In this document: piece after piece, positions 42,001 through 64,000 of the stretch
Layout of the letters: every line of letters begins with the position of its first letter
Numbering within the stretch: the stretch's first letter is position 1
Assembly: GCA_964035545.1 (NCBI GenBank)
Contig: OZ037773.1
Coordinates: 10,693,751 to 10,757,750 of the forward strand
Source of the DNA: Bugula neritina
Lineage: Eukaryota > Animalia > Bryozoa
Length of the DNA stretch: 64,000 nucleotides
Reading direction: 5' to 3'
Position numbers and translations under genes: made by a program
The notes under the pieces: generated by a model
The model's database searches: none
What the model saw: the letters and a program-made list of their open reading frames with translations, nothing else
What the model was told of the DNA's origin: nothing

Positions 42001-44484
42001 GCCAGTGACCAAAATGTCGGCGCTGTGCTGTCCCAGGTGCAGGAGGGCCGCGAAGTAGTCGTGGCCTACTACAGTAAGTCTCTCTCGCCCACTGAACGAA
42101 ATTACTGCACTACCCGAAAGGAATTGCTGGCAGTAATCAAGTCGGTGAAGCATTTCAGACCTTATCTATACGGCAGGAAGTTCCGCTTGCGGACCGACCA
42201 CGCCTCCTTGATTTGGTTATGTAAGAGAGCAGAACCGTCCAGCCAAGTCGCCCGATGGCTCGAGGTCCTAGCTGAGTTCTCTTACCGGATCGAGCACCGA
42301 CCCGGTAAGAAACACGGCAATGCTGATGGACTGAGCCGGCGACCGGACGAGGGGTGTAAACAGTGCCTCAACATCGAGAAGAGGGACGGAGGTCCTCCAA
42401 AATCCGAGTTGAGAGCACTGAACCACTCTGAAACGGAGTATGACTGGGACCAGGGTCAACTCCTACAGAAGGCCGCTACGCCCCCGGAGGCTATCCAACG
42501 CCTCCGTGCCAATCCTGTCTTGGCTGATAACGTTAGGGAGCTACGAAGACTCCAGGAGGACCTCCCTGGAGTGGTAGCCGACGTATATCGTGCCAAAAAG
42601 GAGGGGCGACGACCCAGTGAAGAACAACTGCGGCAGGGATGCACCGAGTTACGGTCGTACTGCCAACGTTGGGACTCCCTGCGGATCGGGCCAGATGGTC
42701 TGCTGACCATCACAGTGGCTGCTCACAACAACCAGTACGGCAGGAAGAGGGTGATCTGCCCAGCCGCCATACGCCGGGAGTTAGTATGGGACACCCACAA
42801 GCAAGCCCACGCCGGGGCGAGCAGGGTGCTCTCCAAGTTACGACTCCGGTGGTACTGGCCCGGCATGGAGCGTGAGGTGCGGCGTAGAGTCAAACAATGC
42901 GAAATCTGCCAGGCCAGCAAGCATGGCCGTCTCCCTGGTGAAGCGGGACGGCGAAGGTTATATGCTGGAAGGCCGTGGCAGGTGGTAGCTATCGACCTAG
43001 TCGGACCCATGCCCGTCACCCCCAGAGGAAACAGTTGGATCCTAGTATTAACCGACCACTTTACACGGTGGGCGGATGCCCTGGCTATTCCAGATGCGTC
43101 CGCCCCCACAGTGGCCAGGGTGCTGGATCAAAATGTATTCTGCTATCTTGGACTACCTGAGCAAATACATTCGGACCAGGGGGCTCAATTCCAGTCCCAA
43201 CTGTTGAGCGACCTCTGCCGCCTCTGGGGAGTAAACCAAAGCAGGACCACCCCGTACCATCCTCAGGGCAACGGGGTGGTGGAACGCAACAATCGCATGT
43301 TGGGCGATGCACTGCGCAGTCTGCTCCTCGGCCGGGGTCAGGAGGAGTGGGATACGGTACTGCCGCAAGTCATGCGGGCCTACCGTAGTACACCACACAC
43401 CAGTACGGGGGAAACCCCTAACCTCCTGATGCTCGGTCGAGAGACGCGAGTGCCTGACCACCTCACATACCACATCCCAGAGCAGGACTATACCATCCAC
43501 GAGTATGCCAGTAAATTGATAGAGGACCTGAGGGCCGCACACGAAATACTGCGGGCGAAGCAGTGGCAGGTACGGCGAGAGGACTCTCAGGAACCACCTC
43601 TCTATCGAACTGGGGACTGGGTGTGGATGGTCAACTACCGTAGGCGTCGAGGACAAGCGGCTAAGCTCCAGCCTAAGTTTGTGGAACCCTACGTAGTAGT
43701 TGAGGCTATGCCCAATCATACGTACAAGTTGGAGCGATCTGGACAGGTCTCTGTCCAGAACGAAACCCGCTTGAAACCGTATTGGGCTAGCCCAGGAGCA
43801 GCAGGAGCAGCCCCCCCGTTGTTGGAGCCCAGGAGGCAGACAGTAACGCGTGGGCGGCAACGGCATGGACCCGAGTACGAAGTGGTCGTGCCGCGGGGAG
43901 AGGACTTGGTGAGGCAGGAGACGCCACTCCCACCAACGGAAGTGCGCCCACCGCCCCCAGTACCAAGTCTACCCCCACCACTTCCGGTTCCGCATCCGCG
44001 TCCGGAAGTGCAAAACCCCCCCGTGGGAGGGGCTCCATCTGGAGACAACAGCGGAGAGGGGAACACCACCACCAACGGCGGGCCAGAAACACCACAGGTG
44101 GAGCAAAATAGCCCACCAGTGAGTACGCCGCCCCAACCAACAGCTACAACTCCCTCTCCAGCTGATACGTCACCTCCCCTGGAACGGGGACAGCGTACTA
44201 GACAACCCCCAGCATACCTTCAAGACTACATATGTGACCGTGTTACAAACGGCAGTTATGAAAGTCTAGCTGGGCGCCGTACGGAAGGACTGGCAGCAAA
44301 GCGTGGGAGTTGTGAACACCACGGAAATCTCAACTTTTGCGAAGGCGGAGTAGTAAACAAAACTACTACGCCCGGGGCAAATAGTTCCAGCCGTGCGCAA
44401 CAACCACGCTGCCCAGTCTTTTCGTACGCTGACGTTGTCAAGGGAAGACGCATTCAAACTCAATCCACGGACATCCAAGCTTGA
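39025..44484 (+). CDS. Gag-Pol polyprotein, 1819 aa
   Basis: Protease LLDSGC; RT LPFGL and YLDD; RNase H DTDASD..E..TDH; integrase H-x4-H..CEIC zinc finger and D(IDLVGP)-D(SDQG)-E(VERNNR). Confidence 0.95.
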   Translation: MDEGVTSMEGGEQNIIIGPLGAGEEVYRNMLEVPVFTGCEDIEQFVQEFRETAAIARWPPRVTLTKLRMALTGEAKPYGWKPSINGIIATLRARFGMPVAVAKSRLRGLLRKTCTPLSDHATLVQRLARTAYSDLPETHRRHYTFEAFVQSLNSLDFHHQLQAKGVTTIEAAIQENKAYAGAERLYKTEEATPQPSREPDHPVRIAAATTKTPIETEISRLMTRLGQLVATITYNHSRKSKRTTAKPPRPMMRRWESGNQGHRHLSGPRFKRQQKPQPPRRPPELRGHTQREKRGGCRQEPVRAQRHTPRQWQTPRRTSQPGRPRDPFSLPLTNRFSPLPVMEQISEAPQGIGEDQNTSPQGNSHRPRKPRNKRAQPRSAETEHAGGIRVQPHGGSYFLPGKVAGKAVTFLLDSGCTTNILSRRVFDTLPLKERGALAPYTGEPGTLADGSRIPFYGIIELAGRVRDQAIQETFVISPLEEDAILGMPFLKRHGCHIDFSKSAMLMGGKELTCVDKFGRPLAGGVQVVRNCTIPGRSRATVHCRVNNSQLSGLGVVEGAHSRIQLASSLNRLTDRGEILVQCVNPFSETVQLPSGSMLGRFHSIQEEDVGPSLGAATEGPQQSPSVRRGTVPSHVKELYQAACNGCTGNVERQTMAQLLRDYSDVFSSGDHDVGLTTAVRHEIPLAAGTTPIRQPTRRLGPEKEKEVSQQVRDLLDRGLIEPAHSAWSSPVVLVRKKDGSWRFCVDYRKLNSVTIQDAYPLPRIDESLDALAGSKYFSTLDLLSGYWQVPLSPDAQEKAAFITRDGLWKWKVLPFGLTSAPATFQRLMEQVLSGLHWKTLLVYLDDVIVISPDFQTHVSRLREVFDRLRGANLKLKPSKCALLQPEVKYLGHIVGRHGVATDPEKVRAIEDWVTPQDLTGLRAFLGLVGYYRQYIPDFAGVAQPLNRLTAKGVTWQWTPVEQRAFDCLKGRLLEAPILAYPDPALEYILDTDASDQNVGAVLSQVQEGREVVVAYYSKSLSPTERNYCTTRKELLAVIKSVKHFRPYLYGRKFRLRTDHASLIWLCKRAEPSSQVARWLEVLAEFSYRIEHRPGKKHGNADGLSRRPDEGCKQCLNIEKRDGGPPKSELRALNHSETEYDWDQGQLLQKAATPPEAIQRLRANPVLADNVRELRRLQEDLPGVVADVYRAKKEGRRPSEEQLRQGCTELRSYCQRWDSLRIGPDGLLTITVAAHNNQYGRKRVICPAAIRRELVWDTHKQAHAGASRVLSKLRLRWYWPGMEREVRRRVKQCEICQASKHGRLPGEAGRRRLYAGRPWQVVAIDLVGPMPVTPRGNSWILVLTDHFTRWADALAIPDASAPTVARVLDQNVFCYLGLPEQIHSDQGAQFQSQLLSDLCRLWGVNQSRTTPYHPQGNGVVERNNRMLGDALRSLLLGRGQEEWDTVLPQVMRAYRSTPHTSTGETPNLLMLGRETRVPDHLTYHIPEQDYTIHEYASKLIEDLRAAHEILRAKQWQVRREDSQEPPLYRTGDWVWMVNYRRRRGQAAKLQPKFVEPYVVVEAMPNHTYKLERSGQVSVQNETRLKPYWASPGAAGAAPPLLEPRRQTVTRGRQRHGPEYEVVVPRGEDLVRQETPLPPTEVRPPPPVPSLPPPLPVPHPRPEVQNPPVGGAPSGDNSGEGNTTTNGGPETPQVEQNSPPVSTPPQPTATTPSPADTSPPLERGQRTRQPPAYLQDYICDRVTNGSYESLAGRRTEGLAAKRGSCEHHGNLNFCEGGVVNKTTTPGANSSSRAQQPRCPVFSYADVVKGRRIQTQSTDIQA

Positions 44485-45081: not shown

Positions 45082-48000
45082 ATGTGGATTAAACGGATCA
45101 GTATCGGGCAGTTTAGAGTTCATTCTCTCATTCCGATTTTATTAATTTTATCAAGTTCTTGCTTCTGCCTTGGTCTAACTGAGGCGTGGATTAGAAATAT
45201 CTATGAGGGCAAGTCTCTCAGCTCTACTAAGTACACTCCTGATTGGGACTCCATAGACTCAAGACCGCTACCTTCATGGTATGACAGCGCAAAGTTCGGG
45301 ATATTTATTCACTGGGGAGTGTTTTCTGTACCAAGCTATGATTCTGAGTGGTTCTGGTGGTATTGGCAAGGAACTTCTCCTAAGCCAGACGTTGTAAGTT
45401 TTATGGCAGGTAATTACCCACCAGATTGGACGTATGCAGACTTTGCAAGCCAATTTACTGCTGAAATGTACGACCCGAATCACTGGGCTGACTTATTCAA
45501 AGCCTCGGGTGCCAAGTAAGTTGCATTTACATCAAGTGTAGATGAAGTAAAGAAGTGGGAACCTTGTTAATAAAGTTACTTTCAAGAGTTACTAGTCTTC
45601 AGTGTAAAAGTGAACAATTATCATGGATACTACGTTATCATGCTGACAATATTTGCAAACTATGTGTTATAGTAATGAAAGAAATACTGCTAGTCTAGCA
45701 TATAGCTCTGACTGCGAGTAGTCTAGACTCTAGTACATATCTCTGACTAGTCTAGACTCTAGTACATATCTCTGACTATAGTGGGTCATATTTTCAGGTA
45801 CGTGGTTCTTACAAGCAAACATCATGAGGGGTTTGCAAACTAGCCTACAAAGTACTCCTTCAACTGGAACTCCATGGCAGTTGGCCCCAAGCGGGATCTA
45901 GTAGGTGAGTATTTTTACTGAGTAGGTAGCTAGTGCATCTAATAACTTTATTCGTGATCAGCTTATCCTGGCACTGGGTCACTAGCAGTATATTATATGT
46001 GTTTATATATGACGTGTTTATATATATGTGTTTATATACGTGTTTATATACGTGTTTATATATGTGTTTATATATGTGTTTATATATATGTGTTTATATA
46101 TGTGTTTATATATGTGTTGATATATGTGTTTATATATGTGTTTATATATGTGTTTATATATGTGTTTATATATGTGTTTATATATGTGTATATATATGTG
46201 TATATATATATGTGTGTTTATATATGTGTTTATATATGTGTTTAGGTGAGCTAGCCTCAGCTATAAGGAACAGAACTGATATAAAGTTTGGACTTCATCA
46301 CTCCATGTTTGAGTGGTTCAACCCTCTCTGGAAACTGGACAGTAGCTCCAAGTTTGCTACAAACTACTTTGTGCATGTGAGTATGTATTATATACTCTGT
46401 ACATGTGAGTATGTATTATATACTCTGTACATGTGAGTATGTATTATATACTCTGTACATGTGAGTATGTATTATATACTCTGTACATGTGAGTATGTAT
46501 TATATACTCTGTACATGTGAGTATGTATTATATACTCTGTACATGTAAGTATGTATTATATACTCTGTGCATGTGAGTATGTATTATATACCAACTACTA
46601 CTATTATATATCAATGTAATACAGGGAAAGACACTACCAGAGTTGTACGAGATTGTGAATATGTATAAACCAGAAATTATCTGGTCTGATGGAGATCCTG
46701 CCCCTTCCTGGTACTGGAATTCTACCGTCTTCTTGGCCTGGCTGTACAATGACAGGTGATGTAGTGGTAGTATAATGACAGGTGATGACAGGTGATGACA
46801 GGTAATGTAGTGGTAGTATAATGACAGGTGATGTAGTGGTAGTATAATGACAGGTGATGACAGGTGATGTAGTGGTAGTATAATGACAGGTGATGGCAGG
46901 TGATGTAGTGGTAGTATAATGACAGGTGATGACAGGTGATGTAGTGGTAGTATAATGACAGGTGATGACAGGTAATGTAGTGGCAGTATAATGACAGGTG
47001 ATGACAGGTGATGTAGTGGTAGTATAATGACAGGTGATGGCAGGTGATGTAGTGGTAGTATAATGACAGGTGATGGCAGGTGATGTAGTGGTAGTACAAT
47101 GACAGGTGATGTAGTGGTAGTATAATGACAGGTGATGACAGGTAATATATTCGTAGTATAATGACAGGTGATGACAGGTGATGTAGTGGTAGTATAATGA
47201 CAGGTGATGACAGGTGATGTAGTGGTAGTATAATGACAGGTGATGACAGGTGATGACAGGTGATGTAGTGGTAGTATAATGACAGGTGATGGCAGGTGAT
47301 GTAGTGGTAGTATAATGACAGGTGATGACAGGTGATGTAGTGGTAGTATAATGACAGGTGATGGCAGGTGATGTAGTGGTAGTATAATGACAGGTGATGA
47401 CAGGTAATATATTCGTAGTATAATGACAGGTGATGACAGGTGATGTAGTGGTAGTATAATGACAGGTGATGACAGGTGATGTAGTGGTAGTATAATGACA
47501 GGTGATGACAGGTGATGTAGTGGTAGTATAATGACAGGTGATGACAGGTGATGTAGTGGTAGTATAATGACAGGTGATGACAGGTGTGATATTGTTTTGC
47601 ACAGCCCAGTTAAAGACACTGTAGTGGTGAATGACAGATGGGGCAACGGTTGTGGCTGTAAACATGGAGGATACTATACCTGTGCTGATAGATATAATCC
47701 AGGTGATTCTTGTGCTACTTCCTCTCTCATTCATTTACTATATGGTTGGCTGGTGTTAATCAGGTCATGTGTTAGTCACTATATGATTGGCTGGTGTTAA
47801 TCAGGTCATGTGTTAGTCACTATATGATTGGCTGGTGTTAATCAGGTCATGTGTTAGTCACTATATGATTGGCTGGTGTTAATCAGGTCATGTGTTAGTC
47901 ACTATATGATTGGCTGGTGTTAATCAGGTCATGTGTTAGTCACTATATGATTGGCTGGTGGTAATCAGGTCATGTGTTAGTCACTATATGATTGTCTGGT

Positions 48001-49898: not shown

Positions 49899-50039
49899 GG
49901 AACTCCGCAAGTACGTCCTACACAGATGCTTTGTCCACCAGCCAGGCATTAGCTAAGCTATGTTGACCAGCCAGTCATTAGCTCAGGCATCTACTTATAT
50001 TTCATCAATTCATGTGACACACATATATATCCTGTGTGC

Positions 50040-51980
50040 ATACAATATATACACTCTCTATACGATATATACACTTTCTATACAATATATACACTTTCTA
50101 TACAATATATACACTTTCTATACAATATATACACTTTCTATACAATATATACACTTTCTATACAATATATACACTTTCTATACAATATTTACACTTTCTA
50201 TACAATATATACCCTTTCTACACAATATATATACACTTTCTATGCAATATATACACTTTCTATACAACATATACACTTTCTTTACAATATATACACTTTC
50301 TATACAATATATACACTTTCTATATAATATATACACTTTCTGCTATACAATATATACACTTTCTTCTATACAATATATACACTTTCTGCTATACAATATA
50401 TACACCTTCTTCTATACAATATATACACTTTCTATACAATATATACACTTTCTATACAATATATACACTTTCTATACAATATATACACTTTCTATACAAT
50501 ATATTATACACTTTCTATACAATATATTATACACTTTCTATACAATATATACCCTTTCTACACAATATATACTCTTTCTATACAATATATACTCTTTCTA
50601 TACAATATATACACTTTCTATATAATATATACACTTTCTGCTATACAATATATACACTTTCTGCTATACAATATATACACCTTCTTCTATACAATATATA
50701 CACTTTCTATACAATATATACACTTTCTATACAATATATACACTTTCTATACAATATATACCCTTTCTACACAATATATATACACTTTCTATACAATATA
50801 TACACTTTCTATACAACATATACACTTTCTTTACAATATATACACTTTCTATATAATATATACACTTTCTGCTATACAATATATACACTTTCTTCTATAC
50901 AATATATACACTTTCTGCTATACAATATATACACCTTCTTCTATACAATATATACACTTTCTATACAATATATACACTTTCTATACAATATATACACTTT
51001 CTATACAATATATACACTTTCTATACAATATATTATACACTTTCTATACAATATATTATACACTTTCTATACAATATATACCCTTTCTACACAATATATA
51101 CTCTTTCTATACAATATATACTCTTTCTATACAATATATACACTTTCTATATAATATATACACTTTCTGCTATACAATATATACACTTTCTGCTATACAA
51201 TATATACACCTTCTTCTATACAATATATACACTTTCTATACAATATATACACTTTCTATACAATATATACACTTTCTATACAATATATACCCTTTCTACA
51301 CAATATATATACACTTTCTATACAATATATACACTTTCTATACAACATATACACTTTCTTTACAATATATACACTTTCTATACAATATATACACTTTCTA
51401 TATAATATATACACTTTCTGCTATACAATATATACACTTTCTTCTATACAATATATACACTTTCTGCTATACAATATATACACCTTCTTCTATACAATAT
51501 ATACACTTTCTATACAATATATACACTTTCTATACAATATATACACTTTCTATACAATATATACACTTTCTATACAATATATTATACACTTTCTATACAA
51601 TATATTATACACTTTCTATACAATATATACCCTTTCTACACAATATATACTCTTTCTATACAATATATACTCTTTCTATACAATATATACACTTTCTATA
51701 TAATATATACACTTTCTGCTATACAATATATACACTTTCTTCTATACAATATATACACTTCCTATATAATATATACACTTTCTGCTATACAATATATACA
51801 CTTTCTTCTATACAATATATACACTTTCTGCTATACAATATATACACCTTCTTCTATACAATATATACACTTTCTATACAATATATACACTTTCTATACA
51901 AAATATGCACTTTCTATACAAGATATACACTTTCTATACAATATATACACTTTCTATACAATATATACACTTTCTATACA
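50040..51980. repeat. Intergenic ~20-bp minisatellite with higher-order periodicity
   Basis: TACAATATATACACTTTCTA; variant blocks recur about every 540 bp. Confidence 0.95.
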
Positions 51981-52170: not shown

Positions 52171-55100
52171 ATGGGACAGAAGTTGACATATCGAAGAGAC
52201 TTCAATGCTGGCAGTCTTGTAGGCAACTCTGTAGACATATATGGTGGCAGTTACCTCTGTCTACCTTGCCGGTGCACCACCAGAACTGGTGTCTACGTCT
52301 CAACCATCATCTCTCTGGTAATATTCCACTTTAACTCTGCTTCAAGTCTGTATAATAGAGATATATTACATGTATGCTGTATAGTAGAGATATATTACAA
52401 CTGTATGCTGTATAGTAGAGAGATATTACAACATGTATGCTGTATAGTAGAGATATATTGCAACTGTATGCTGTATAATAGAGATATATTACAACATGTA
52501 TGCTGTATAGTAGAGATATATTACAACATGTATGCTGTATAGTAGATATATATTACAACTGTATGCTGTATAATAGAGATATATTACAACTGTATGCTGT
52601 ATAGTAGAGATATATTGCAACTGTATGCTGTATAATAGAGAGATATTACAACTGTATGCTGTATAATGGAGATATATTACAACTGTATGCTGTATAATGG
52701 AGATATATTACAACTGTATGCTGTATAATGGAGATATATTACAACTGTATACTGTATAACTTAGGTCTGGGGTATCACAGCCATTATACTGGATTTGACG
52801 AAGATTGGTGAGTGAATGTTTACATATATATAAGTCGATCTTAGGTAATGGTTTTAAATACTGTGTGCTTCTACCAGACTGACCTGTCTGATGTTAAAGT
52901 ATGTATCACACTGACCTGTATATTAAAGTATCTACCACACTGATCTGTATATTAAAGTATGTATCACACTGACCTGTATATTAAAGTATCTACCACACTG
53001 ATCTGTATATTAAAGTATGTATCACACTGACCTGTATATTAAAGTATGTACCACACTGACCTGTATGTTAAAGTATCTACCACACTGATCTGTATATTAA
53101 AGTATGTATCACACTGACCTGTATATTAAAGTATCTATCACACTGACCTGTATATTAAAGTATGTACCACACTGACCTGTATATTAAAGTATGTATCACA
53201 CTGACCTGTATATTAAAGTATGTACCAGACTGATCTGTATATTAAAGTATGTATCACACTGACCTGTATATTAAAGTATGTATCACACTGACCTGTATAT
53301 ATTAAAGTATGTACCAGACTGACCTGTATATTAAAGTGTGTACCACACTGACCTGTATATTAAAGTATGTACCACACTGACCTATATATTAAAGTATGTA
53401 CCACACTGACCTGTATATTAAAGTATGTACCACACTGACCTGTATATTAAAGTATGTATCACACTGACCTGTATATTAAAGTGTGTATCACACTCACCTG
53501 TATATTAAAGTATGTACCACACTGACCTGTATATTAAAGTATGTACCACACTGACCTGTATATTAAAGTGTGTACCACACTGACCTGTATATTAAAGTAT
53601 GTACCACACGGACCTGTATATTAAAGTATGTACCACACTGACCTGTATATTAAAGTATGTACCACACTGACCTGTATATTAAAGTATGTACCACACTGAC
53701 CTGTATATATTAAAGTATGTACCACACTGACCTGTATATATTAAAGTATGTATCACACTGACCTGTATATTAAAGTGTGTACCACACTGACCTGTATATT
53801 AAAGTATGTATCACACTGACCTGTATATTAAAGTGTGTACCACACTGACCTGTATATTAAAGTATGTATCACACTGACCTGTATATTAAAGTATGTATCA
53901 CACTGACCTATATATTAAAGTATGTACCACACTGACCTGTATATTAAAGTATGTACCACACTGACCTGTATATTAAAGTATGTATCACACTGACCTGTAT
54001 ATTAAAGTGTGTATCACACTCACCTGTATATTAAAGTATGTACCACACTGACCTGTATATTAAAGTATGTATCACACTGACCTGTATATTAAAGTGTGTA
54101 CCACACGGACCTGTATATTAAAGTATGTACCACACTGACCTGTATATTAAAGTATGTACCACACTGACGTGTATATTAAAGTATGTACCACACTGACCTG
54201 TATATTAAAGTATGTACCACACTGACCTGTATATATTAAAGTATGTATCACACTGACCTGTATATTAAAGTGTGTACCACACTGACCTGTATATTAAAGT
54301 ATGTATCACACTGACCTGTATATTAAAGTGTGTACCACACTGACCTGTATATTAAAGTATGTATCACACTGACCTGGATATTAAAGTATGTATCACACTG
54401 ACATATATATTAAAGTATGTACCACACTGACCTGTATATTAAAGTATGTACCACACTGACCTGTATATTAAAGTATGTACCACACTGACCTGTATATTAA
54501 AGTGTGTATCACACTCACCTGTATATTAAAGTATGTACCACACTGACCTGTATATTAAAGTATGTATCACACTGACCTGTATATTAAAGTGTGTACCACA
54601 CTGACCTGTATATTAAAGTATGTACCACACGGACCTGTATATTAAAGTATGTACCACACTGACCTGTATATTAAAGTATGTACCACACTGACCTGTATAT
54701 TAAAGTATGTACCACACTGACCTGTATATATTAAAGTATGTATCACACTGACCTGTATATTAAAGTGTGTATCACACTGACCTGTATATTAAAGTATGTA
54801 TCACACTGACCTGTATATTATTTGTTTTTGTAGACTACTATTACCTCTCACCAAACTTTAACCTCAAATTCTACACTATTTGGACCACAGCCGTACTTCT
54901 GGCTCTCATCACTATGAAGTACATGGTAAGCCATTTTCTATATTGATATATTGAGTTATGTACTGATACTATACACTGAGGTGACCTGATACTATACACT
55001 GAGGTGACCTGATACTATATACTGAGGTGACCTGATACTATATACTGAGGTGACCTGAGATTATATACTGAGGTGACCTGAGACTATATACTGAGGTGAC

Positions 55101-56830
55101 CTTAGACTATACACTGAGGTGACCTGAGACTCTATACTGAGTTGACCTGATACTATATACTGAGGTGACCTGAGACTATATACTGAGGTGACCTGATACT
55201 ATACACTGAGGTGACCTGAGACTGTATACTGAGGTGACCTGAGACTATATAAACTGAGGTGACCTGATACTATATACTGAGGTGAGCTGAGACTATATAC
55301 TGAGGTGACCTGATACTATACACTGAGGTGACCTGAGACTATATACTGAGGTGACCTGAGACTATATACTGAGGTGACCTGAGACTATATACTGAGGTGA
55401 CCTGAGACTATACACTGAGGTGACCTGATACTATACACTGAGGTGACCTGAGACTATATACTAAGGTGACCTGATACTATGCTATGTTGCAGGAAAAGTT
55501 ATGGTGGCTCTGTATACCCTATCTTTTCTTGACCTCTGGTTACATCATCGGGCTGATAGCTGACACAATTATTTTTCTGTCTCATGGTAAATACCCTGAC
55601 TGTTCATCTATACTATATATTGTTATATATAATATTGTTCTGTATTATATTGTTATGTATTATATTGTTATGTATTATATTGTTATGTATTATATTGTTA
55701 TGTATTATATTGTTATGTATTATATTGTTATGTATTATATTGTTATGTATTGTATTGTTATGTATTATATTGTTCTGTATTATATTGTTCTGTATTATAT
55801 TGTTATGTATTATATTGTTATGTATTATATTGTTATGTATTATATTGTTATGTATTATATTGTTATGTATTATATTGTTCTGTATTATATTGTTATGTAT
55901 TATATTGTTATGCACTACATTATTATATATTATTATACATTATATTGTATTGTTATATATTTTATAGAATCGTTTGAAGTTCCAATTCATTATTTACACT
56001 TTGCCGTTAACATCCCTATGACGTTGTTTCAGGTATTTAAAAGTTATCAGTACTTACAGTACCTACAGTACATTAAATACATACAGTATACTTACAGTAT
56101 ACCTACAGTACATTAAATACTTACAGTATATTTTCAGCTCTGGACTGTGCTGCACTGCGCTTACTATGTCTATGAAATGAGATGCAATCATGTGACCACC
56201 CTCCCGGCAGCTACCGCCACTATCTCTCTCAATCGCTGCCCCAGGTGGTGTTACAACTTCTTCTTACAACACATTACTGGTGCTGCCGGTGCTTCCGGTA
56301 CAAGTGGAGATACTGGTGCTTCTCATGAGCATCAGCTTCTTAATCCTCGACCTACACCCGGTATGTAATATAGTAATATAGTGTGTAATATAGTGTGTAA
56401 TATAGTGTGTAATATAGTAATATAGTAATATAGTGTGTAATATAGTAATATAGTGCGTAATATAGTGTGTAATATAGTAATATAGTGTGTAATATAGTAA
56501 TATAGTGTGTAATATAGTAATATAGTGTGTAATATAGTAATATAGTGTGTAATATAGTAATATAGTGTGTAATACAGTAATAATATAGTGTGTAATATAG
56601 TAATATAGTGTGTAGTGTAGTGTGTAATATAGTAATATAGTGTGTAATATAGTGTGTAATATAGTGTGTAATATAGTGTGTAATATAGTAATATATGATA
56701 TATTATGATAATATTGGAGGAATGAGAGCAAGAGCAACTCACCCCCCACACGCTGTGCAAGAGGCAACCTTCTAATCATATTTCCGACGAATCAGTTGAC
56801 TCCAGACTCCTCTTCGACCAATCAGCAGTA
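52171..56830 (+). CDS. Orphan multi-pass (about four TM) membrane protein; exons approx 52171-52317, 52765-52807, 54834-54925, 55493-55586, 55969-56031, 56138-56360, last exon from ~56720 (end uncertain)
   Basis: Six exons join in phase with canonical sites; hydrophobic segments GVYVSTIISLVWGITAIIL, FYTIWTTAVLLALITM, WWLCIPYLFLTSGYIIGLIADTIIFL, HFAVNIPMTLFQLWTVLHCAYYVY. Confidence 0.7.
52350..56695. repeat. Membrane-protein-gene intronic arrays: ~32 bp (52350-52760), 29 bp x ~66 (52876-54820), 23 bp (54965-55480), 15 bp (55618-55915), AATATAGT-based (56365-56695)
   Basis: CACACTGACCTGTATATTAAAGTATGTAY; TGAKACTATAYACTGAGGTGACC; TATTGTTATGTATTA. Confidence 0.95.
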
Positions 56831-57442: not shown

Positions 57443-60400
57443 CTACTGACTTTCCAAGAAAATGGCTTTTACTGCAGAACCATCTGAGTCTTCAAAATAA
57501 GCATCTCCTACTAGGAAGTCTGTCAAGAAGTTGTGCAGCATGAAGTCGTATTCTTCAGCTTCACTAAAGCATTCTCCTTCTTCAATGCAAACGGATGTGT
57601 AGTTGGTAACATCAGCTGCCGATTTACAGTCAATTACTCTAAGACGGTACTTCCTGTCTCTACCATCCACATTCCAAATGTGCACGAACTCTCGACCAAC
57701 TAGGGTGTCCGGACATCTTACAATCTCTGCAGCTTTATTTACCACACTCACAGGAATATCCAACTTCTGATTGATTACATTCTCTTCAAATGAACTTGGA
57801 ACTTGGGTGAACGATTTAATTGTTGAAGACAACAACCGTCTCTTTTTGTCAATCTGGGACTGCAGTTTTACTTGAATTCTCTCACCAATTTCTTCTGAAA
57901 CTTGCGTCGCTCGGCATTTAGATGTACTTTGGAGTGTCCTTGAAGCTTTAATTGAGTTATATATGGATCCACTTTCAAAAGTATCCAACCATTCAAAGGT
58001 TTTATTAGTCGCAAAGGCTACTTTAGCCGACAAATGTGCAGCAGTTGAATTTTGTGAATTACGACACAAATTATCAGTCATACCTAAAACACTTTCTGCA
58101 ATCATGTTGTCTGATGGGGCATTAGTAGCAAGAACAACTCTTTCAGGAGGAAGTTCGTACAGTTCCCCTCCTTGAAGGTACCGTGTTAGTTGTCTGACCA
58201 TTACTTGCTCAAATGACTTGGCTGTTTGAGAGGCCAGAGAGAGTAAAGCATGATCTGGTTCAACAGCATTGAGGTGTAAAGCTACAGGGTCTTCAGAATT
58301 GGTAATGTTGAAACAGTTAAAATCTTTACTCCACAAAAGTTCAGGTTCTTGTACAAGTTTCTGGACGTTCTTATAGGCCTGGTTTAGTATTCGACTGCTT
58401 TCAAGGTTGGAGACATTTTCTTTCCGGTACAAGCATGTCATCCATGGCCCTGTTAACCGTTTCCCAAAAAGTCCTCCAATGAGCAGCTCTTGTCTTACAA
58501 CATCTGACTGCAAAGCTGATAGAATACCTTTAGAAATTTCCTTTTCAGACACATCAGAGAAATACATTATAAGTAATTTCAGCAGATAGTAAATGTTGCC
58601 GCAAAGAGCAAATAGAACGTGAAATCTATTGCCAACGTATCGCATTATAAGCCTATGATCTTCCTTTTGATGATCAAAGAATGCTTTAAATTTATTTGGT
58701 TCACCTGAAGAATTTTTTCGTTTCATCTTTGATATATTTATGATGAGTTTCAGCAAGACCGACTCATTTCCAGGAAGGGTGGAGGAGACATTTTGCTTTA
58801 ATTCATAAGATTTTGCCAACTTTCTATACTCTATAGAAAGGCTGTCCAATGGATGTATATTGCAATTCAGTTCCATTAAGGAGTGGCCCACATATTGTTC
58901 CAGTTTTGCTGTAACACAACTATTTACAGCAGCTCGATCACTCAAAGTTGAAGTGATGTTTTCTTTGACTTTGCTCAGCACCTCCAGCCTGTCACAGTTG
59001 GTATTAAAACTGCAGTAACAGTCCACCGCATTTTCTAAAGCTGAGATGATGTGCTCTGAATAATCTGATGCTTGACTACCAGCTACAACAGTGACATCAA
59101 GGACAAAGTGTCCGGAGTCTGTATTAACATGAACTTCGTTCAGATGTTTCCATTTTACTGTTGTAGCATCCCATGCTAGATTCACAAAGGTAGAATTTAG
59201 AATTGCCTCAACAGTTTGAACCATAGAAAGAAGACGCATCTCAGCTATCATGTTCAAGACCGAAGTCACCGAAGGCATGGATGAGAAAGATATGTCAAAC
59301 AGCAATAAAGAGATTTCCTCAATCAAACTTGAAATAAACCTGGTTGGTACCCGGTGACGAGCGCATAGATAAACAGCTTTACGGATTTTTTCTTGGTACT
59401 TGCCGCTTTCTTTTGTCTCTACTACTGCGTTTGTCTTTGAGTTTTTTGAGATTTCTTGCAGTCGTAGAGCTTCTTGCAATTCATCCATTGCCACTTCTTG
59501 ATCTTGAAGCTCCAATTTGAGAGCAGAATTTTGCTTTTTGAGTTTAGAAATTTGTTGTATGTATGCAAGCTCTATAGCTCTGTTGGTAGCCACAGCTTGC
59601 TGAGTTTTACTGTTGCTATGGACAACCTGAATAAGCTGTTTCTTTGTTTCAGCCAATTTTTGTCTAAGAGGTAAGTTCCTATTTTCAGCTCTTCTCATCT
59701 TACTGTAAACTCTTTTGTACATTTTCTTCTGTTTGTTACAAGCTTTTCGTGCTTTTTCCAATTTAATTTCGATTTTAGCCTTTTCAGACACTAGACTTAA
59801 GTTCTGTTTAATCAATTTGCTTGTCTTCAGCTGAATGTACTTGTACTTGAAGTTAAGCTGATTTAATTGATTTGATAAGTTTGTAGAGTGTTTGCTAGAC
59901 TTTGACTTTAGCTGGGAATCCTTAGCTGACAGTTTTGAGTGTTGAGGTTCTGCAGGTTGGGTATTCGCAAGTGTTGGGGATTGTCTTGGCAACTTCGTCT
60001 TTGTTGATGGTCCGCGGGCTACAGGCTGCTTCAGTGTCGATGGTCCGCGGGCTACAGGCTGCTTCAGTGTTGATGGTCCAGCTACTGGCTGATTCAGTGT
60101 TGATGGTCCGGCTACTGGCTGATTCAGTGTTGATGGTCCGGCTACAGGCTGCTTCAGTGTTGATGGTCCGGCTACTGGCTGATTAGTTTCTACTGGCTGT
60201 AGCTTCAGGTATTTTGATGGCTGTATATTCAGCTGTGTTTGGTATTGTAATGGCTGTATATTTAGTTGTGTTTGGTATTGTAATGGCTGTACATTTAACT
60301 GTGTTTGGTATTGTAATGGTTGTAGCTTCAGGTATTGTAATGGCTGTACATTCAGCTGTGTTTGGTATTGTAACGGCTGTACATTCAGCTGTGTTTGGCT

Positions 60401-61225
60401 TTTTGGTGACTCTACGTTTAGCTCTGATCGACTTTGTGGTTGCTCTGCGCTCAGCTGTGGTTGACTTTGCAGTGACTGTCTGCTCAGTTGTGGTTGACTT
60501 TGCAATGACTGTCTGCTCAGCTGTGGTTGACTTTGCAATGACTCTCTGCTCAGCTGTGGTTGACTTTGCAATGACTGTCTGCTCAGCTGTGGTTGACTTT
60601 GCAATGACTGTCTGCTCAGCTGTGGTTGACTTTGCAATGACTGTCTGCTCAGCTGTGGTTGACTTTGCAATGACTGTCTGCTCAGCTGTGGTTGACTTTG
60701 CGATGACTGTCTGCTCAGCTGTGGTTGACTTTGCAATGACTGTCTGCTCAGCTGTGGTTGACTTTGCAATGACTGTCTGCTCAGCTGTGGTTTACTTTGC
60801 AATGACTGTCTGCTCAGCTGTGGTTGACTTTGCAATGACTGTCTGCTCAGCTGTGGTTGACCTTGCAATGACTGTCTGCTCAGCTGTGGTTGACTTGCCT
60901 GCCGATCAGGAAAATCAAACAAAGTCAAATCTACTAGTTCTATATCTAAAAATGCAATCATTTGAACTCTGATATGCCGCCTTTTTACAGATTTGTTTTT
61001 CTTTTGGTATTCTTGCCAAATCTCCTCAATGTCAGACTCTATCAATCTACTGCTAAACTTTTCTGGAAGGGTCATGAATACGTGCTTCACCTTCTCCGCA
61101 ATTGGCTGGCCGTGTCGCAGTTGTTTCAACATGACCACAATATGACCATGTTTTAAGCACTTTAGTGTAGTCAGTGAGTTTAGCTCTTCACCAAAAGAGT
61201 TTAGTATCTCTAAGTAGTCCATCAT
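57443..61225 (-). CDS. Intronless DDE-transposase-like protein, copy A (~1260 aa), CxxH-type (hAT/P/MULE/Kolobok-like group)
   Basis: Candidate triad D (LAWDATT), D (LSDRAAVN), E (DNMIAESVLG); CNIH after the second D; GNRFH motif; preceded by a coiled coil and Gln-rich repeats. First ATG at 61225 (ORF track starts at GTG 61237). Superfamily not resolved; no TIRs found. Confidence 0.72.
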   Translation of the reverse strand: MMDYLEILNSFGEELNSLTTLKCLKHGHIVVMLKQLRHGQPIAEKVKHVFMTLPEKFSSRLIESDIEEIWQEYQKKNKSVKRRHIRVQMIAFLDIELVDLTLFDFPDRQASQPQLSRQSLQGQPQLSRQSLQSQPQLSRQSLQSKPQLSRQSLQSQPQLSRQSLQSQPQLSRQSSQSQPQLSRQSLQSQPQLSRQSLQSQPQLSRQSLQSQPQLSRQSLQSQPQLSRESLQSQPQLSRQSLQSQPQLSRQSLQSQPQLSAEQPQSRSELNVESPKSQTQLNVQPLQYQTQLNVQPLQYLKLQPLQYQTQLNVQPLQYQTQLNIQPLQYQTQLNIQPSKYLKLQPVETNQPVAGPSTLKQPVAGPSTLNQPVAGPSTLNQPVAGPSTLKQPVARGPSTLKQPVARGPSTKTKLPRQSPTLANTQPAEPQHSKLSAKDSQLKSKSSKHSTNLSNQLNQLNFKYKYIQLKTSKLIKQNLSLVSEKAKIEIKLEKARKACNKQKKMYKRVYSKMRRAENRNLPLRQKLAETKKQLIQVVHSNSKTQQAVATNRAIELAYIQQISKLKKQNSALKLELQDQEVAMDELQEALRLQEISKNSKTNAVVETKESGKYQEKIRKAVYLCARHRVPTRFISSLIEEISLLLFDISFSSMPSVTSVLNMIAEMRLLSMVQTVEAILNSTFVNLAWDATTVKWKHLNEVHVNTDSGHFVLDVTVVAGSQASDYSEHIISALENAVDCYCSFNTNCDRLEVLSKVKENITSTLSDRAAVNSCVTAKLEQYVGHSLMELNCNIHPLDSLSIEYRKLAKSYELKQNVSSTLPGNESVLLKLIINISKMKRKNSSGEPNKFKAFFDHQKEDHRLIMRYVGNRFHVLFALCGNIYYLLKLLIMYFSDVSEKEISKGILSALQSDVVRQELLIGGLFGKRLTGPWMTCLYRKENVSNLESSRILNQAYKNVQKLVQEPELLWSKDFNCFNITNSEDPVALHLNAVEPDHALLSLASQTAKSFEQVMVRQLTRYLQGGELYELPPERVVLATNAPSDNMIAESVLGMTDNLCRNSQNSTAAHLSAKVAFATNKTFEWLDTFESGSIYNSIKASRTLQSTSKCRATQVSEEIGERIQVKLQSQIDKKRRLLSSTIKSFTQVPSSFEENVINQKLDIPVSVVNKAAEIVRCPDTLVGREFVHIWNVDGRDRKYRLRVIDCKSAADVTNYTSVCIEEGECFSEAEEYDFMLHNFLTDFLVGDAYFEDSDGSAVKAIFLESQ

Positions 61226-64000
61226 ATAAAAAGTCACAAAGCAGCAGAAAAAGCGCCGTTTTTCATCATATTATTTTAGCTAAAAAACAAATAAAATAAT
61301 TAGACTTTTCAATGCCAGTGACCATATAATTAGAGTTAATAACTGAATGAAGGTTGAAAAATTTACTAAAGCAATTTTCTGAGCACACTCAAATCCAACT
61401 AGAGGGTTTTCAATTTAATTAAACAATTTAGTTCACCTGTTGTATCCTAGAAGTAATCGTTTATAGAGACATGCACAGCTTTTGTTATGATGATCATCAT
61501 GTGTTATTCAAACTCTAGCTAGTCTATCAATGAATGATATAACTGCAGGTTATTGTAATTATAACCACGCCTATAGGTTGCCTATTGTTGATATGATATG
61601 ACTGTACTATTGTGACTGTAATAAGCCAAGACTTATCTCTTCAGCTGTAAACATTGGTGTGCTTGTAATGTGTTGCGGTTTGTGAAAGGAGCTAATTGCA
61701 GGACTAAGTAGACTGAAAGCATATTTGATTTCTCTGTTTTCATGGCTTATTCAGAAAAATTAAACTCGTTTACTTTTAAGCCAGAAGAATTGGCTGAATT
61801 AAGCATTTTAAAGAATGGTCATATTGTAGCTATTTTTCGAAAGTTGCCCCACAAAGGCATATGCAAGCCAAAAGAGATATACCGAGTGTTGCCAGACCAG
61901 TTCAAGTGTAGAATCACCGAGTTGACAATCGAACAGGTTTTAAAAGAATATAAAAAATGAATAAGAATATTGGAAAGAAGAGCGCCGTGGCTAGAATGAT
62001 AACATTCTTGGATGTGGAAATAGGGAACTCTACAACTCCTTTAGATTTACGTTTGCTGCCAAAGGCACCTTACCAATGCTCTATCAGTAGCAGGAACAGA
62101 ATACATCTGGCGCACAAGTTAACCCAAATAAGAGCCGATGAAACGGCTAAAAAGAACTTGTCTTTGACTTTTGAAATTACAAAACTAAAAGAGAGGCTAC
62201 GGATGGCACATTTTAAAGCAAGGAAATACTACCGTAGACATAAAAGAGCCTTAGGAAAAATCGATTTCCTTGAGAAAAACATAAATGGCCTCAAAAGGAC
62301 TGTAACAAGGGTTAAAAAGCAAATGACTTTTTGCCATAAAAGAGAACAAAAAAATAAAACGGAATCAGAAAACAAACTGACCCTCATTAGAGTTGCTATG
62401 CGACGGGAGTATTTAGAACTAAAAAAGCAGAATTCTATTTTGAAGGATAGAATTATAGAGTTGGAAGTAAAGCAAGATGAGCTAAATGATGATGTTGATA
62501 CCCAGCAGTTGAAAACCAAAGACAGTGGAAAATATGTGGAAAACATTCGTAAGGCTGTTTACTATTGTGCTCGTCGGCAGGTGCCAATGAATTATATTTC
62601 TGATATATTGGGTAAAAGCGTTGAGTTACTGACAGGTATCAGCGTGAGTCCACTTCCATCAGGATCTTCATGTTCAAACATGATAGCTGAGATGCGTCTT
62701 CTTTCTATGGTTCAGGCTGTTGAGGCAATTCTAAATTCTACCTTTGTGAATCTAGCATGGGATGCTACAACAGTAAAATGGAAACATCTGAACGAAGTTC
62801 ATGTTAATACAGACTCCGGACACTTTGTCCTTGATGTCACTGTTGTAGCTGGTAGTCAAGCATCAGATTATTCAGAGCACATCATCTCAGCTTTAGAAAA
62901 TGCGGTGGACTGTTACTGCAGTTTGAATACCAACTGTGACAGGCTGGAGGTGCTGAGCAAAGTCAAAGAAAACATCACTTCAACTTTGAGTGATCGAGCT
63001 GCTGTAAATAGTTGTGTTACAGCAAAACTGGAACAATATGTGGGCCACTCTTTAATGGAACTGAATTGCAATATACATCCATTGGACAGCCTTTCTATAG
63101 AGTATAGAAAGTTGGCAAAATCTTATGAGTTAAAGCAAAATGTCTCCTCCACCCTTCCTGGAAATGAGTCAATATTGCTGAAGCTCATTTTGAGTATTTC
63201 AAAGATAAAGTACAAGAGCTCATCAGGTGAGCCAAGCAAGTTTAAAGCATTCTTTAGTCAGCAACAAGAAGATCATAGGCTTATAATGCGATACGTTGGC
63301 AATAGATTTCACGTTCTATTTGCTCTTTGCGGCAACATTCACTATCTGCTGAAATTACTTATAATGTATTTCTCTGATGTGTCTGAAAAGGAAATTTCTA
63401 AAGGTATTCTATCAGCTTTGCAGTCAGATGTTGTAAGACAAGAGCTACTCATTGGAGGACTTTTTGGGAAACGGTTAACAGGGCCATGGATGACATGCTT
63501 GTACCGGAAAGAAAATGTCTCCAACCTTGAAAGCAGTCGAATACTGAACCAGGCCTATAAGAACGTCCAGAAACTTGTACAAGAACCTGAACTTTTGTGG
63601 AGTAAAGATTTTAACTGTTTCAACATTGCCAATTCTGAAGACCCTGTAGCTTTACACCTCAATGCTGTTGAACCAGATCATGCTTTACTCTCTCTGGCCT
63701 CTCAAACAGCCAAGTCATTTGAGCAAGTAATGGTCAAACAACTAACACGGTACCTTCAAGGAGGGGAGCTGTACGAACTTCCTCCTGAAAGAGTTGTTCT
63801 TGCTACTAATGCCCCATCAGACAACATGATTGCAGAAAGTGTTTTAGGGTTGTCTGATAATTTGTGTCGTAATTTACGCAATTCAACTGCTGCACATTTG
63901 TCAGCTAAAGTAGCCTTTGCGACTAATAAAACCTTTGAATGGTTGGATACTTTAGAAAGTGGATCCATATATAACTCAATTAAAGCTTCAAGGACACTCC
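57931..64000. repeat. Large inverted repeat: arms 57931-59254 and 62677-64000 (>=1324 bp, ungapped)
   Basis: AACATGATAGCTGAGATGCGTCTT at 62677 is the reverse complement of 59254 downward; the window end AAGGACACTCC matches 57931; near-duplicate antisense ORFs in the track (METFSFRY..., MDPLSKVS...). Confidence 0.95.
61742..64000 (+). CDS. DDE-transposase-like copy B, split by a 1-nt frameshift at ~61957, runs off the window end
   Basis: 61742-61960 is homologous to the copy A N-terminus (LKNGHIV/LKHGHIV, LPDQF/LPEKF); a second frame opens at ATG 61957 and stays open to 64000 with the same WDATT, SDRAAVN, CNIH, GNRFH and MIAESVLG motifs. Confidence 0.75.

What the first reader, a model, noticed from the sequence alone, without database searches (positions are those of the whole stretch)
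57443..64000. Head-to-head transposase-like pair with a homogenised catalytic half and diverged N-termini
Seen: two intronless paralogs point away from a ~515-bp spacer (61226-61741). Their N-terminal and coiled-coil regions are only weakly similar (LKHGHIV/LKNGHIV; TKESGKYQEKIRKAVY/TKDSGKYVENIRKAVY). Identity jumps abruptly to near 100% at 59254/62677, just before the first catalytic Asp, and continues ungapped for at least 1324 bp. Established: a D..D-CxxH..E layout marks hAT/P/MULE/Kolobok-type transposases, whose end recognition typically involves N-terminal domains. Inference: an old inverted duplicate kept alike by arm-to-arm gene conversion, or a two-gene palindromic element or domesticated pair with one shared catalytic core and two different N-terminal modules. 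I know of no described element with this layout.
Basis: partly seen in the sequence, partly recalled or inferred. Interest (0 to 1): 0.78.

Follow-up and report, generated by a model that had tools for sequence, protein, structure and literature searches.

The report
Gene conversion between inverted transposase-like paralogs
Two old, back-to-back copies of an unnamed transposase-like gene in a bryozoan genome have had the catalytic 1.8 kb of their coding sequence copied from one to the other (gene conversion). This is an ordinary process, but the gene family is widespread and unannotated, and its predicted fold is closest to the Hermes hAT transposase.

Summary
Gene A (57443-61225, minus) and gene B (61742 to 521 bases past the window's end, plus) diverge from a 516-bp spacer. 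They share an ungapped 1786-bp inverted repeat (57469-59254 / 62677-64462) with 60 mismatches.

Outside the arms the genes are saturated at synonymous sites. Inside, dS is 0.03-0.06, except for a 97-bp island that keeps the old 71% identity. That pattern points to mosaic gene conversion between ancient paralogs.

It is not a palindromic two-gene transposon. There are no terminal repeats, the flanks and N-terminal halves are single-copy, and other family members sit alone or in tandem. B also carries a frameshift in its N-terminal domain.

The family is large (3628 cluster representatives) and unnamed. Other paralog pairs show an older, core-limited homogenisation.

This scan has already noted gene conversion between inverted paralogs of other gene families in this genome (Bugula neritina), but not at this locus.

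The parts
57443..61225 (-). Gene A: intact intronless ORF. It is 1264 aa from the GTG at 61237; the first ATG is at 61225 and the stop at 57443-57445.
60923..61222 (-). A N-terminal helical domain (about aa 6-105, family motif NGH[IV]). The fold is predicted confidently but has no clear solved relative.
59942..60901 (-). In-frame tandem repeats inside gene A (33-bp and 30-bp units, aa 113-432). They sit in the family's variable linker.
59438..59830 (-). A coiled-coil-like region (about aa 470-600). The family profile here matches only coiled-coil proteins in the PDB.
59255..59416 (-). First 54 residues of the conserved core in A (TKxGxKY...). This stretch was not converted: 52% aa identity to B, pS 0.77.
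57469..59254 (-). Arm A of the converted tract. It covers A aa 662-1256: catalytic core, long helix and C-terminal beta-barrel.
62677..64000 (+). Arm B of the converted tract. It continues to window-equivalent 64462, beyond the window (L008:1212).
58664..58760 (-). Unconverted island in arm A (arm positions 495-591). It has 28 mismatches, pS 0.71 and pN 0.16.
63171..63267 (+). The same unconverted island in arm B.
57980..59185 (-). RNase H-like DDE domain with an all-alpha insertion domain (A aa 685-1086). Conserved residues: D690 (59168-59170), D767 (58937-58939), C792/H795 (58853-58864), W932 (58442-58444), E1048 (58094-58096).
57494..57691 (-). C-terminal small beta-barrel (A aa 1183-1248). 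Its topology resembles SH3/Tudor domains, but it was not searched on its own.
   Evidence: secondary structure of the model
61226..61741 (.). 516-bp spacer between the two divergent start codons. It is single-copy in the genome and is presumed to hold both promoters.
61742..61960 (+). Gene B, first 72 codons (N-terminal domain). It ends at a TGA at 61958-61960, directly after an A6 run at 61952-61957, which is the frameshift point.
61957..64000 (+). Gene B main frame: 855 aa from the ATG at 61957, in a frame open from 61954. The stop is at window-equivalent 64519-64521 (L008:1269-1271).

Best explanation
A and B are ancient, divergently transcribed paralogs of an unannotated metazoan family of roughly 900-aa proteins. 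The family architecture is an N-terminal helical domain, a variable linker, a coiled coil, a Hermes-like DDE catalytic domain with an alpha-helical insertion domain, a long helix and a small C-terminal beta-barrel.

Shown:
- The 3' 1.8 kb of the two genes was made alike by recombinational copying between the inverted copies. The tract runs from 28 codons before the first catalytic Asp to 7 codons past the family's conserved C-terminus.
- There were at least two tracts or ages: dS is about 0.026 in the inner part and about 0.056 in the outer part.
- A 97-bp island was skipped and keeps the old divergence.

Inferred:
- The mechanism is double-strand-break repair using the inverted copy as template. 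This could be non-crossover conversion, or crossovers that merely flip the central 3.4 kb.
- The N-terminal halves stay different because at about 70% identity or less they no longer offer the homology that conversion needs.
- The pair arose by a local inverted duplication. It is not a mobile unit now.
- Both copies stayed under purifying selection for a long time, so the proteins do, or until recently did, something. By fold, the most likely activity is DNA cleavage or transposition chemistry of the hAT type.

Whether they are still transposases of an element with unrecognised ends or host-retained genes is open.
For: Arms: 1786 bp ungapped with 60 mismatches.

Synonymous divergence: pS is 0.77 in the 162 nt before the boundary and 0.71 in the island, against dS 0.026 in the inner arm and 0.056 in the outer arm. 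Omega is 0.08 in the island and 0.2-0.4 in the tracts.

In every other family pair, identity in the 54 residues before the boundary tracks identity after it. In A/B it is 52% against 94%.

Trees: A and B are sisters in both partitions, with an A-B path of 2.4 against 0.041 substitutions per site.

Not a mobile unit: the flanks, spacer and N-terminal halves are unique in the genome, and there are no TIRs.

The same core-limited lowering of pS is seen in L012/L011 and L011/L015.
Against: No reads, alternate haplotype or related species were available, so the direction, the age in years and the ongoing nature of the conversion are not shown.

A single partial inverted duplication that overwrote one gene would give nearly the same picture. 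Only the island and the two dS levels argue for repeated or patchy conversion.

pS in the poorly alignable N-terminal parts of other pairs may be inflated by misalignment.

Catalytic activity is inferred from a predicted structure and conserved residues only.

Short or degenerate TIRs would escape the exact-seed test.
Confidence: 0.8

Rival explanations
1. A single recent structural event, not gene conversion. A 1.8-kb 3' piece of one gene was duplicated in inverted orientation and joined to the 5' half of an older, already diverged neighbour, creating a chimera. The arms have simply been diverging since.
For: One continuous ungapped block with sharp ends. The outer end lies just past the conserved C-terminus.
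Against: The 97-bp island has ancestral-level synonymous divergence inside the block. The two halves of the block have twofold different dS. The unconverted 54 core residues just upstream are homologous and collinear, so the recipient already had a full-length core.
Confidence: 0.1
2. A functional two-subunit system: a domesticated or mobile pair that works as a heteromer. Selection, aided by conversion, keeps one shared catalytic core, and two different N-terminal modules recognise two different DNA sites.
For: Both genes were long under purifying selection. The N-terminal domain folds confidently, and its weak structural neighbours are mostly winged-helix/HTH DNA-binding domains. A shared spacer could be a bidirectional promoter.
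Against: B's N-terminal domain is cut by a frameshift in an assembly of QV 53.7. Selection does not explain identity at synonymous sites. There are no TIRs and no other copies. Family members elsewhere are single or tandem. The same core/N-terminus contrast appears between genes on different chromosomes. The N-terminal fold matches are below the noise level.
Confidence: 0.06
3. The inverted arms serve as a hairpin-RNA source. Read-through transcripts would fold into 1.8-kb dsRNA and yield small RNAs that silence the transposase family.
For: A long, 97%-identical inverted repeat separated by 3.4 kb.
Against: The genes are transcribed away from each other, so a normal transcript holds only one arm. 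The arms show coding constraint, with omega 0.08-0.4 and third-position bias of changes. Other family members are only about 67% identical in DNA, which is too far for small-RNA targeting.
Confidence: 0.03
4. Assembly artefact: a false inverted duplication or a collapsed haplotype.
For: The locus is about 120 kb from the end of the scaffold. Fold-back chimeras do occur in long-read assemblies.
Against: The arms differ at 60 sites in a mosaic pattern and are joined to unique, mutually diverged 5' halves. The assembly has 132x HiFi coverage and QV 53.7.
Confidence: 0.01

Closest known systems
Hermes and other hAT-superfamily transposases
   Different: No Pfam hAT family matches (PF05699 and the others). 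PF05699 rings at 14 other places in this genome but never at this family's loci. There is no BED zinc finger. Instead the protein has a novel helical N-terminal domain, a long coiled coil and a C-terminal beta-barrel. No TIRs or 8-bp target duplications were found. Sequence identity to Hermes is about 10%.
P element / THAP9 and MULE / IS256 (ISCth4) transposases, and Kolobok and Dada, which share the C/DxxH motif
   Different: These matches are weaker than the one to Hermes. The family has no THAP domain and no zinc fingers. Dada has CCCC and CCHC fingers, introns and DxxH. Kolobok could not be compared because no sequences were at hand.
Concerted evolution by gene conversion between inverted paralogs, as seen in palindrome arms and domain-restricted conversion in multigene families
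   Same: Sharp tract ends, homogenised synonymous sites, a patchy tract with an unconverted island, and restriction to the better-conserved domain.
   Different: Nothing essential. The converted genes happen to be transposase-like, and the tract starts inside the conserved core rather than at its edge.
Domesticated transposase genes (for example THAP9, ZBED and other hAT-derived host genes)
   Same: A single-copy locus without recognisable ends, long-term purifying selection and an intact catalytic triad.
   Different: Orthology across species was not testable. The same genome holds decayed family copies, B is frameshifted, and the family's 3628 clusters at 50% identity look more like a multicopy element.

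Membership tests
hAT superfamily transposase | RNase H-like catalytic fold with a DDE triad | tested here: met
hAT superfamily transposase | CxxH motif after the second Asp, and an alpha-helical insertion domain with a conserved Trp | tested here: met
   C792xxH795 is invariant. The insertion domain aligns with that of Hermes. W932 (in the GPWM motif) is nearly invariant. Residue-level equivalence of W932 with the Hermes Trp was not checked.
hAT superfamily transposase | hAT C-terminal dimerisation domain signature (Pfam PF05699) or other Pfam hAT families | tested here: not met
   No Pfam hit at E<=1 in A, B or nine relatives. The six-frame PF05699 scan of the genome hits 14 other loci, none belonging to this family.
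hAT superfamily transposase | N-terminal BED zinc finger | tested here: not met
   No zf-BED hit. The N-terminal domain is helical and has no Cys/His cluster.
hAT superfamily transposase | Short terminal inverted repeats and 8-bp target-site duplications | tested here: not met
   There are no inverted repeats beyond chance around A, B or the pair, around relatives on metagenome contigs, or at the ends of the C5 duplications. Degenerate TIRs could have been missed.
Gene conversion between paralogs | Abrupt switch from diverged to near-identical sequence, including synonymous sites | tested here: met
   pS is 0.77 before the boundary, against dS 0.026-0.056 after it. DNA identity changes from 71.6% to about 99%.
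Gene conversion between paralogs | Mosaic tracts, or discordance between gene parts relative to other family members | tested here: met
   A 97-bp island at 71% identity lies inside the arms. Identity before and after the boundary is concordant in all other pairs. Path lengths are 2.4 against 0.041.
Composite or palindromic two-gene transposon | Terminal repeats bounding the unit, and more than one copy of the unit | tested here: not met
   The inverted homology ends inside the coding sequences. The flanks and the inner 3.4 kb are single-copy. No TIRs were found.
Domesticated transposase | Orthologs at a conserved position in related species | not testable with these tools
Domesticated transposase | Long-term purifying selection on an immobile single-copy gene | tested here: inconclusive
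   Omega is 0.08 in the island and 0.2-0.4 in the tracts, and the locus is single-copy. However, B is frameshifted, and active transposases also evolve under purifying selection.

The most novel reading that the evidence does not exclude
The family may be a lineage of Hermes-fold DDE transposases, at the rank of a superfamily or a deep hAT branch, that has not been described. It lacks a BED finger and the hAT sequence signature. It has its own N-terminal helical domain, a coiled coil and a C-terminal beta-barrel, and it is spread over many animal phyla. In Bugula it behaves like a locally duplicating gene family whose catalytic cores are repeatedly homogenised while the putative DNA-recognition N-termini diversify. 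That would be a natural way to generate new specificities on one conserved enzyme.
Probability: 0.2. Interest if true: 0.6.

Novelty: new variant of a known kind. Interest (0 to 1): 0.35.

Why it matters
The mechanism at this locus, gene conversion between inverted paralogs, is textbook and recurrent in this genome, so the pair itself adds little.

The by-product is more useful. A large family has no Pfam model and no name, yet a confident Hermes-like catalytic fold and an unusual domain set. It comprises 3628 cluster representatives and is found in annelid, echinoderm, mollusc, nematode and bryozoan data.

If Repbase or Dfam do not already hold it, it deserves a family model so that such genes stop being annotated as 'hypothetical protein'.

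The locus is also a clean teaching example. It shows how conversion tracts stop where homology runs out, and how an unconverted island dates the true age of a duplicate.

Tried and rejected
- Pfam scans of A, B and nine relatives found only noise.
- Sequence and profile searches of the PDB found only coiled-coil hits.
- Rfam on the window found nothing.
- ESM Atlas returned only unnamed clusters, one auto-named 'tag-278'.
- The N-terminal domain fold search gave no match above noise.
- TIR searches were negative around A, B and the pair, on metagenome contigs and at the C5 duplication ends.
- Comparing metagenome contigs to find element ends failed, because the contigs are the same loci from different samples.
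- The island was tested as a conversion from a third paralog. It was rejected, since A and B are both only 57-62% identical to L011/L012 there.
- Dada was read up and rejected on its zinc fingers, introns and DxxH. The KolobokP paper gave no usable criterion.
- Literature look-ups of the two named homologs found no paper.
- A profile-profile comparison with canonical hAT genes of this genome could not be run.
Full report
**Origin.** The window is G000:C9:10693751-10757750 of a 216,009,554-base, 321-sequence assembly. Size, sequence count (320 scaffolds plus the mitochondrion) and nine chromosomes match the published Bugula neritina assembly tzBugNeri2.1 (216.00 Mb, HiFi 132x, QV 53.7; PMC11480708). 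Earlier notes of this scan also name that bryozoan. The sequence is not human-like, and nothing here is viral apart from one retroelement that I noted in passing only.

**The observation.**
- Gene A is an intact 1264-aa ORF on the minus strand (57443-61237, first ATG at 61225).
- Gene B starts at 61742 on the plus strand and runs off the window. With the next 10 kb (L008) its stop lies at window-equivalent 64519-64521.
- The repeat finder reports a single inverted pair, 57931-59254 / 62677-64000, at 97%. Searching the whole genome and aligning the two genes extends it to 57469-59254 / 62677-64462. That is 1786 bp ungapped with 60 mismatches.
- Upstream, blastn recovers only 102 bp at 71.6%.
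- Protein identity is 31% in the N-terminal 255 aligned residues. It is 52% in the 54 conserved core residues directly before the boundary and 94% after it.
- B is not one open frame. Its first 72 codons end at a TGA beside an A6 run (61952-61960), and the remainder reads in another frame. That frame also offers an ATG at 61957 and an 855-aa ORF. At QV 53.7 this shift is probably real in the sequenced haplotype.
- A's extra length comes from about 320 codons of in-frame 33- and 30-bp tandem repeats (59942-60901) in the family's variable linker.

**Why this is gene conversion.**
- The 60 mismatches are not spread evenly. Arm positions 495-591 hold 28 of them (71% identity). The rest of the inner kilobase is about 99% identical and the outer 0.8 kb about 97%.
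- By Nei-Gojobori counting, the stretch before the boundary has pS 0.77 and the island pS 0.71, both saturated. The converted parts have dS 0.026 (inner) and 0.056 (outer).
- Selection on the protein cannot erase synonymous differences, so copying between the arms is required.
- In all 54 other pairwise comparisons within the family, identity in the 54 residues before the boundary tracks identity after it. Only A/B is discordant.
- Maximum-likelihood trees put A and B as sisters in both partitions. The path between them is 2.4 substitutions per site before the boundary and 0.041 after it.
- The island is not borrowed from another paralog. A and B are both only 57-62% identical to the C5/C6 copies there.
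- The outer end of the tract lies 24 bp before A's stop, seven codons past the family's conserved C-terminus, after which the two 3' ends are unrelated.
- Omega is 0.08 in the island and 0.2-0.4 in the tracts, so both genes were maintained as coding sequence.

**What the genes encode.**
- Pfam finds nothing in A, B or nine relatives. PDB sequence and profile searches find only coiled coils in the middle of the protein.
- A word-index search found eight relatives of about 900 aa without Pfam domains.
- A profile search of 1.84 billion cluster representatives found 3628 at E<=1e-3 and 456 at E<=1e-30, many of them fragments. The few named ones are 'hypothetical' or 'uncharacterized' proteins of Capitella teleta and Anneissia japonica. 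Atlas clusters point to molluscs, nematodes and fungi.
- With a 39-sequence alignment (A2), AlphaFold2 gives a confident model of A residues 607-1264 (pLDDT 92.9, pTM 0.85). The model shows a b1-b2-b3-a-b4-a-b5 RNase H-like fold, a roughly 200-residue all-alpha insertion, the Glu-bearing helix, a 53-residue helix and a small C-terminal beta-barrel.
- Foldseek ranks the Hermes hAT transposase first (E 1.7e-6), then the P element transposase (7e-5) and ISCth4.
- D690, D767, C792, H795, W932 and E1048 are invariant or nearly so in the family and identical in A and B.
- Several distant relatives begin with a PPKKKR-type basic motif. This fits nuclear proteins, which is an inference.

**Is it a mobile two-gene element? 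No evidence supports this.**
- The inner 3.4 kb (both N-terminal halves plus the spacer) and the left flank occur once in the genome. So does the right flank, apart from a common ~450-bp repeat about 3 kb downstream of B.
- No inverted repeat longer than expected from shuffled flanks bounds A, B or the pair.
- Elsewhere in the genome the family has four other long ORFs (801-917 aa): C6 holds two in tandem, and C5 holds two intact copies plus one broken copy. There are also many decayed fragments on C1-C5.
- The C5 copies lie in 10-17 kb segmental duplications whose ends differ between pairs. One end is a (TA)n run, and there are no TIRs.
- By contrast, canonical hAT elements recognised by PF05699 do exist in this genome, including three equal-scoring 563-aa ORFs on three chromosomes. 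None coincides with this family.
- Relatives on metagenome contigs show no TIRs either, but those contigs are short and redundant.

**A wider pattern.** In L012/L011 (different chromosomes) and in L011/L015 (tandem), windowed pS is 0.45-0.95 over the first roughly 290 codons but 0.10-0.44 over the core. DNA similarity between the C5 and C6 copies is detectable only over the core, at 87%. Misalignment may inflate the N-terminal values. Still, the shift is consistent with older, core-limited exchange among family members. The A/B pair is the most recent and sharpest instance of a general tendency, not a special device.

**Verdict.**
- The locus is an ancient inverted duplicate of a hAT-like-fold transposase gene. 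Its catalytic two-thirds were homogenised by patchy gene conversion.
- It is not a palindromic element, and nothing requires a two-module heteromer.
- This scan has already filed gene conversion between inverted paralogs of other families in this genome (BCL11-like, MUC4-like, PPT2) as ordinary.
- The residual interest lies in the unannotated, widespread protein family.

**Limits.** Repbase/Dfam are not available here. The C-terminal barrel was not searched on its own.

Noticed in passing
window 39025-44484 (+): The GC-rich block (58% GC against about 35% around it) is one intact 1819-aa ORF with Ty3/gypsy-type gag-protease-RT-RNase H-integrase motifs. It is an apparently young LTR retrotransposon. 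I observed it only and did no further work on it.
   Followed up: no
window 59942-60901 (inside gene A): About 320 codons of 33-bp and 30-bp minisatellite units have expanded in frame inside a coding sequence, giving QPQLSRQSLQS-type and QPVAGPSTL-type repeats. The reading frame is kept.
   Followed up: partly
window 55016-56730, 45933-47734 and 49960-51154: Dense arrays of short tandem repeats with units of 8-23 bp. The block at 50-52 kb has 22% GC and a GC skew of -0.89. This minisatellite richness seems typical of the genome.
   Followed up: no
L008:4184-4630 (window-equivalent about 67.4-67.9 kb): A ~450-bp repeat unit. It has more than 80 matches genome-wide, often in tandem arrays on C6, C5, C2, C1 and C7.
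   Followed up: no
L008:6242-7805 (window-equivalent about 69.5-71 kb): Exon-like pieces of a methylcrotonoyl-CoA carboxylase beta-like gene. I identified it by eye from conserved peptides. The exons are separated by microsatellite-filled introns.
   Followed up: no
G000:C5:8076001-8106000, 8236001-8266000 and 8266301-8296300 (L037-L039, L065-L070): Three copies of a 10-17 kb segmental duplication, 94-97% identical, each carrying one family member. Two are intact and one is broken by stops. One duplication end sits at a (TA)n run.
   Followed up: partly
L011/L012 (C6 and C5) and L011/L015 (C6 tandem): Other paralog pairs of the family also have much lower synonymous divergence in the catalytic core than in the N-terminal third. 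This suggests older core-limited gene conversion, including between chromosomes.
   Followed up: partly
G000:C1:30462367, C3:28905230 and C5:1593917: Three equal-scoring canonical hAT dimerisation-domain matches lie in 563-aa open frames on three chromosomes. They are probably a recently active ordinary hAT transposon.
   Followed up: no
alignment A3, N-termini of P0022, P0028, P0029, P0032, P0039 and P0041: Distant family members start with a PPKKK(R/K)-like basic motif. Many have a CxxC pair just before the coiled coil. Both features are absent from A and B.
   Followed up: no
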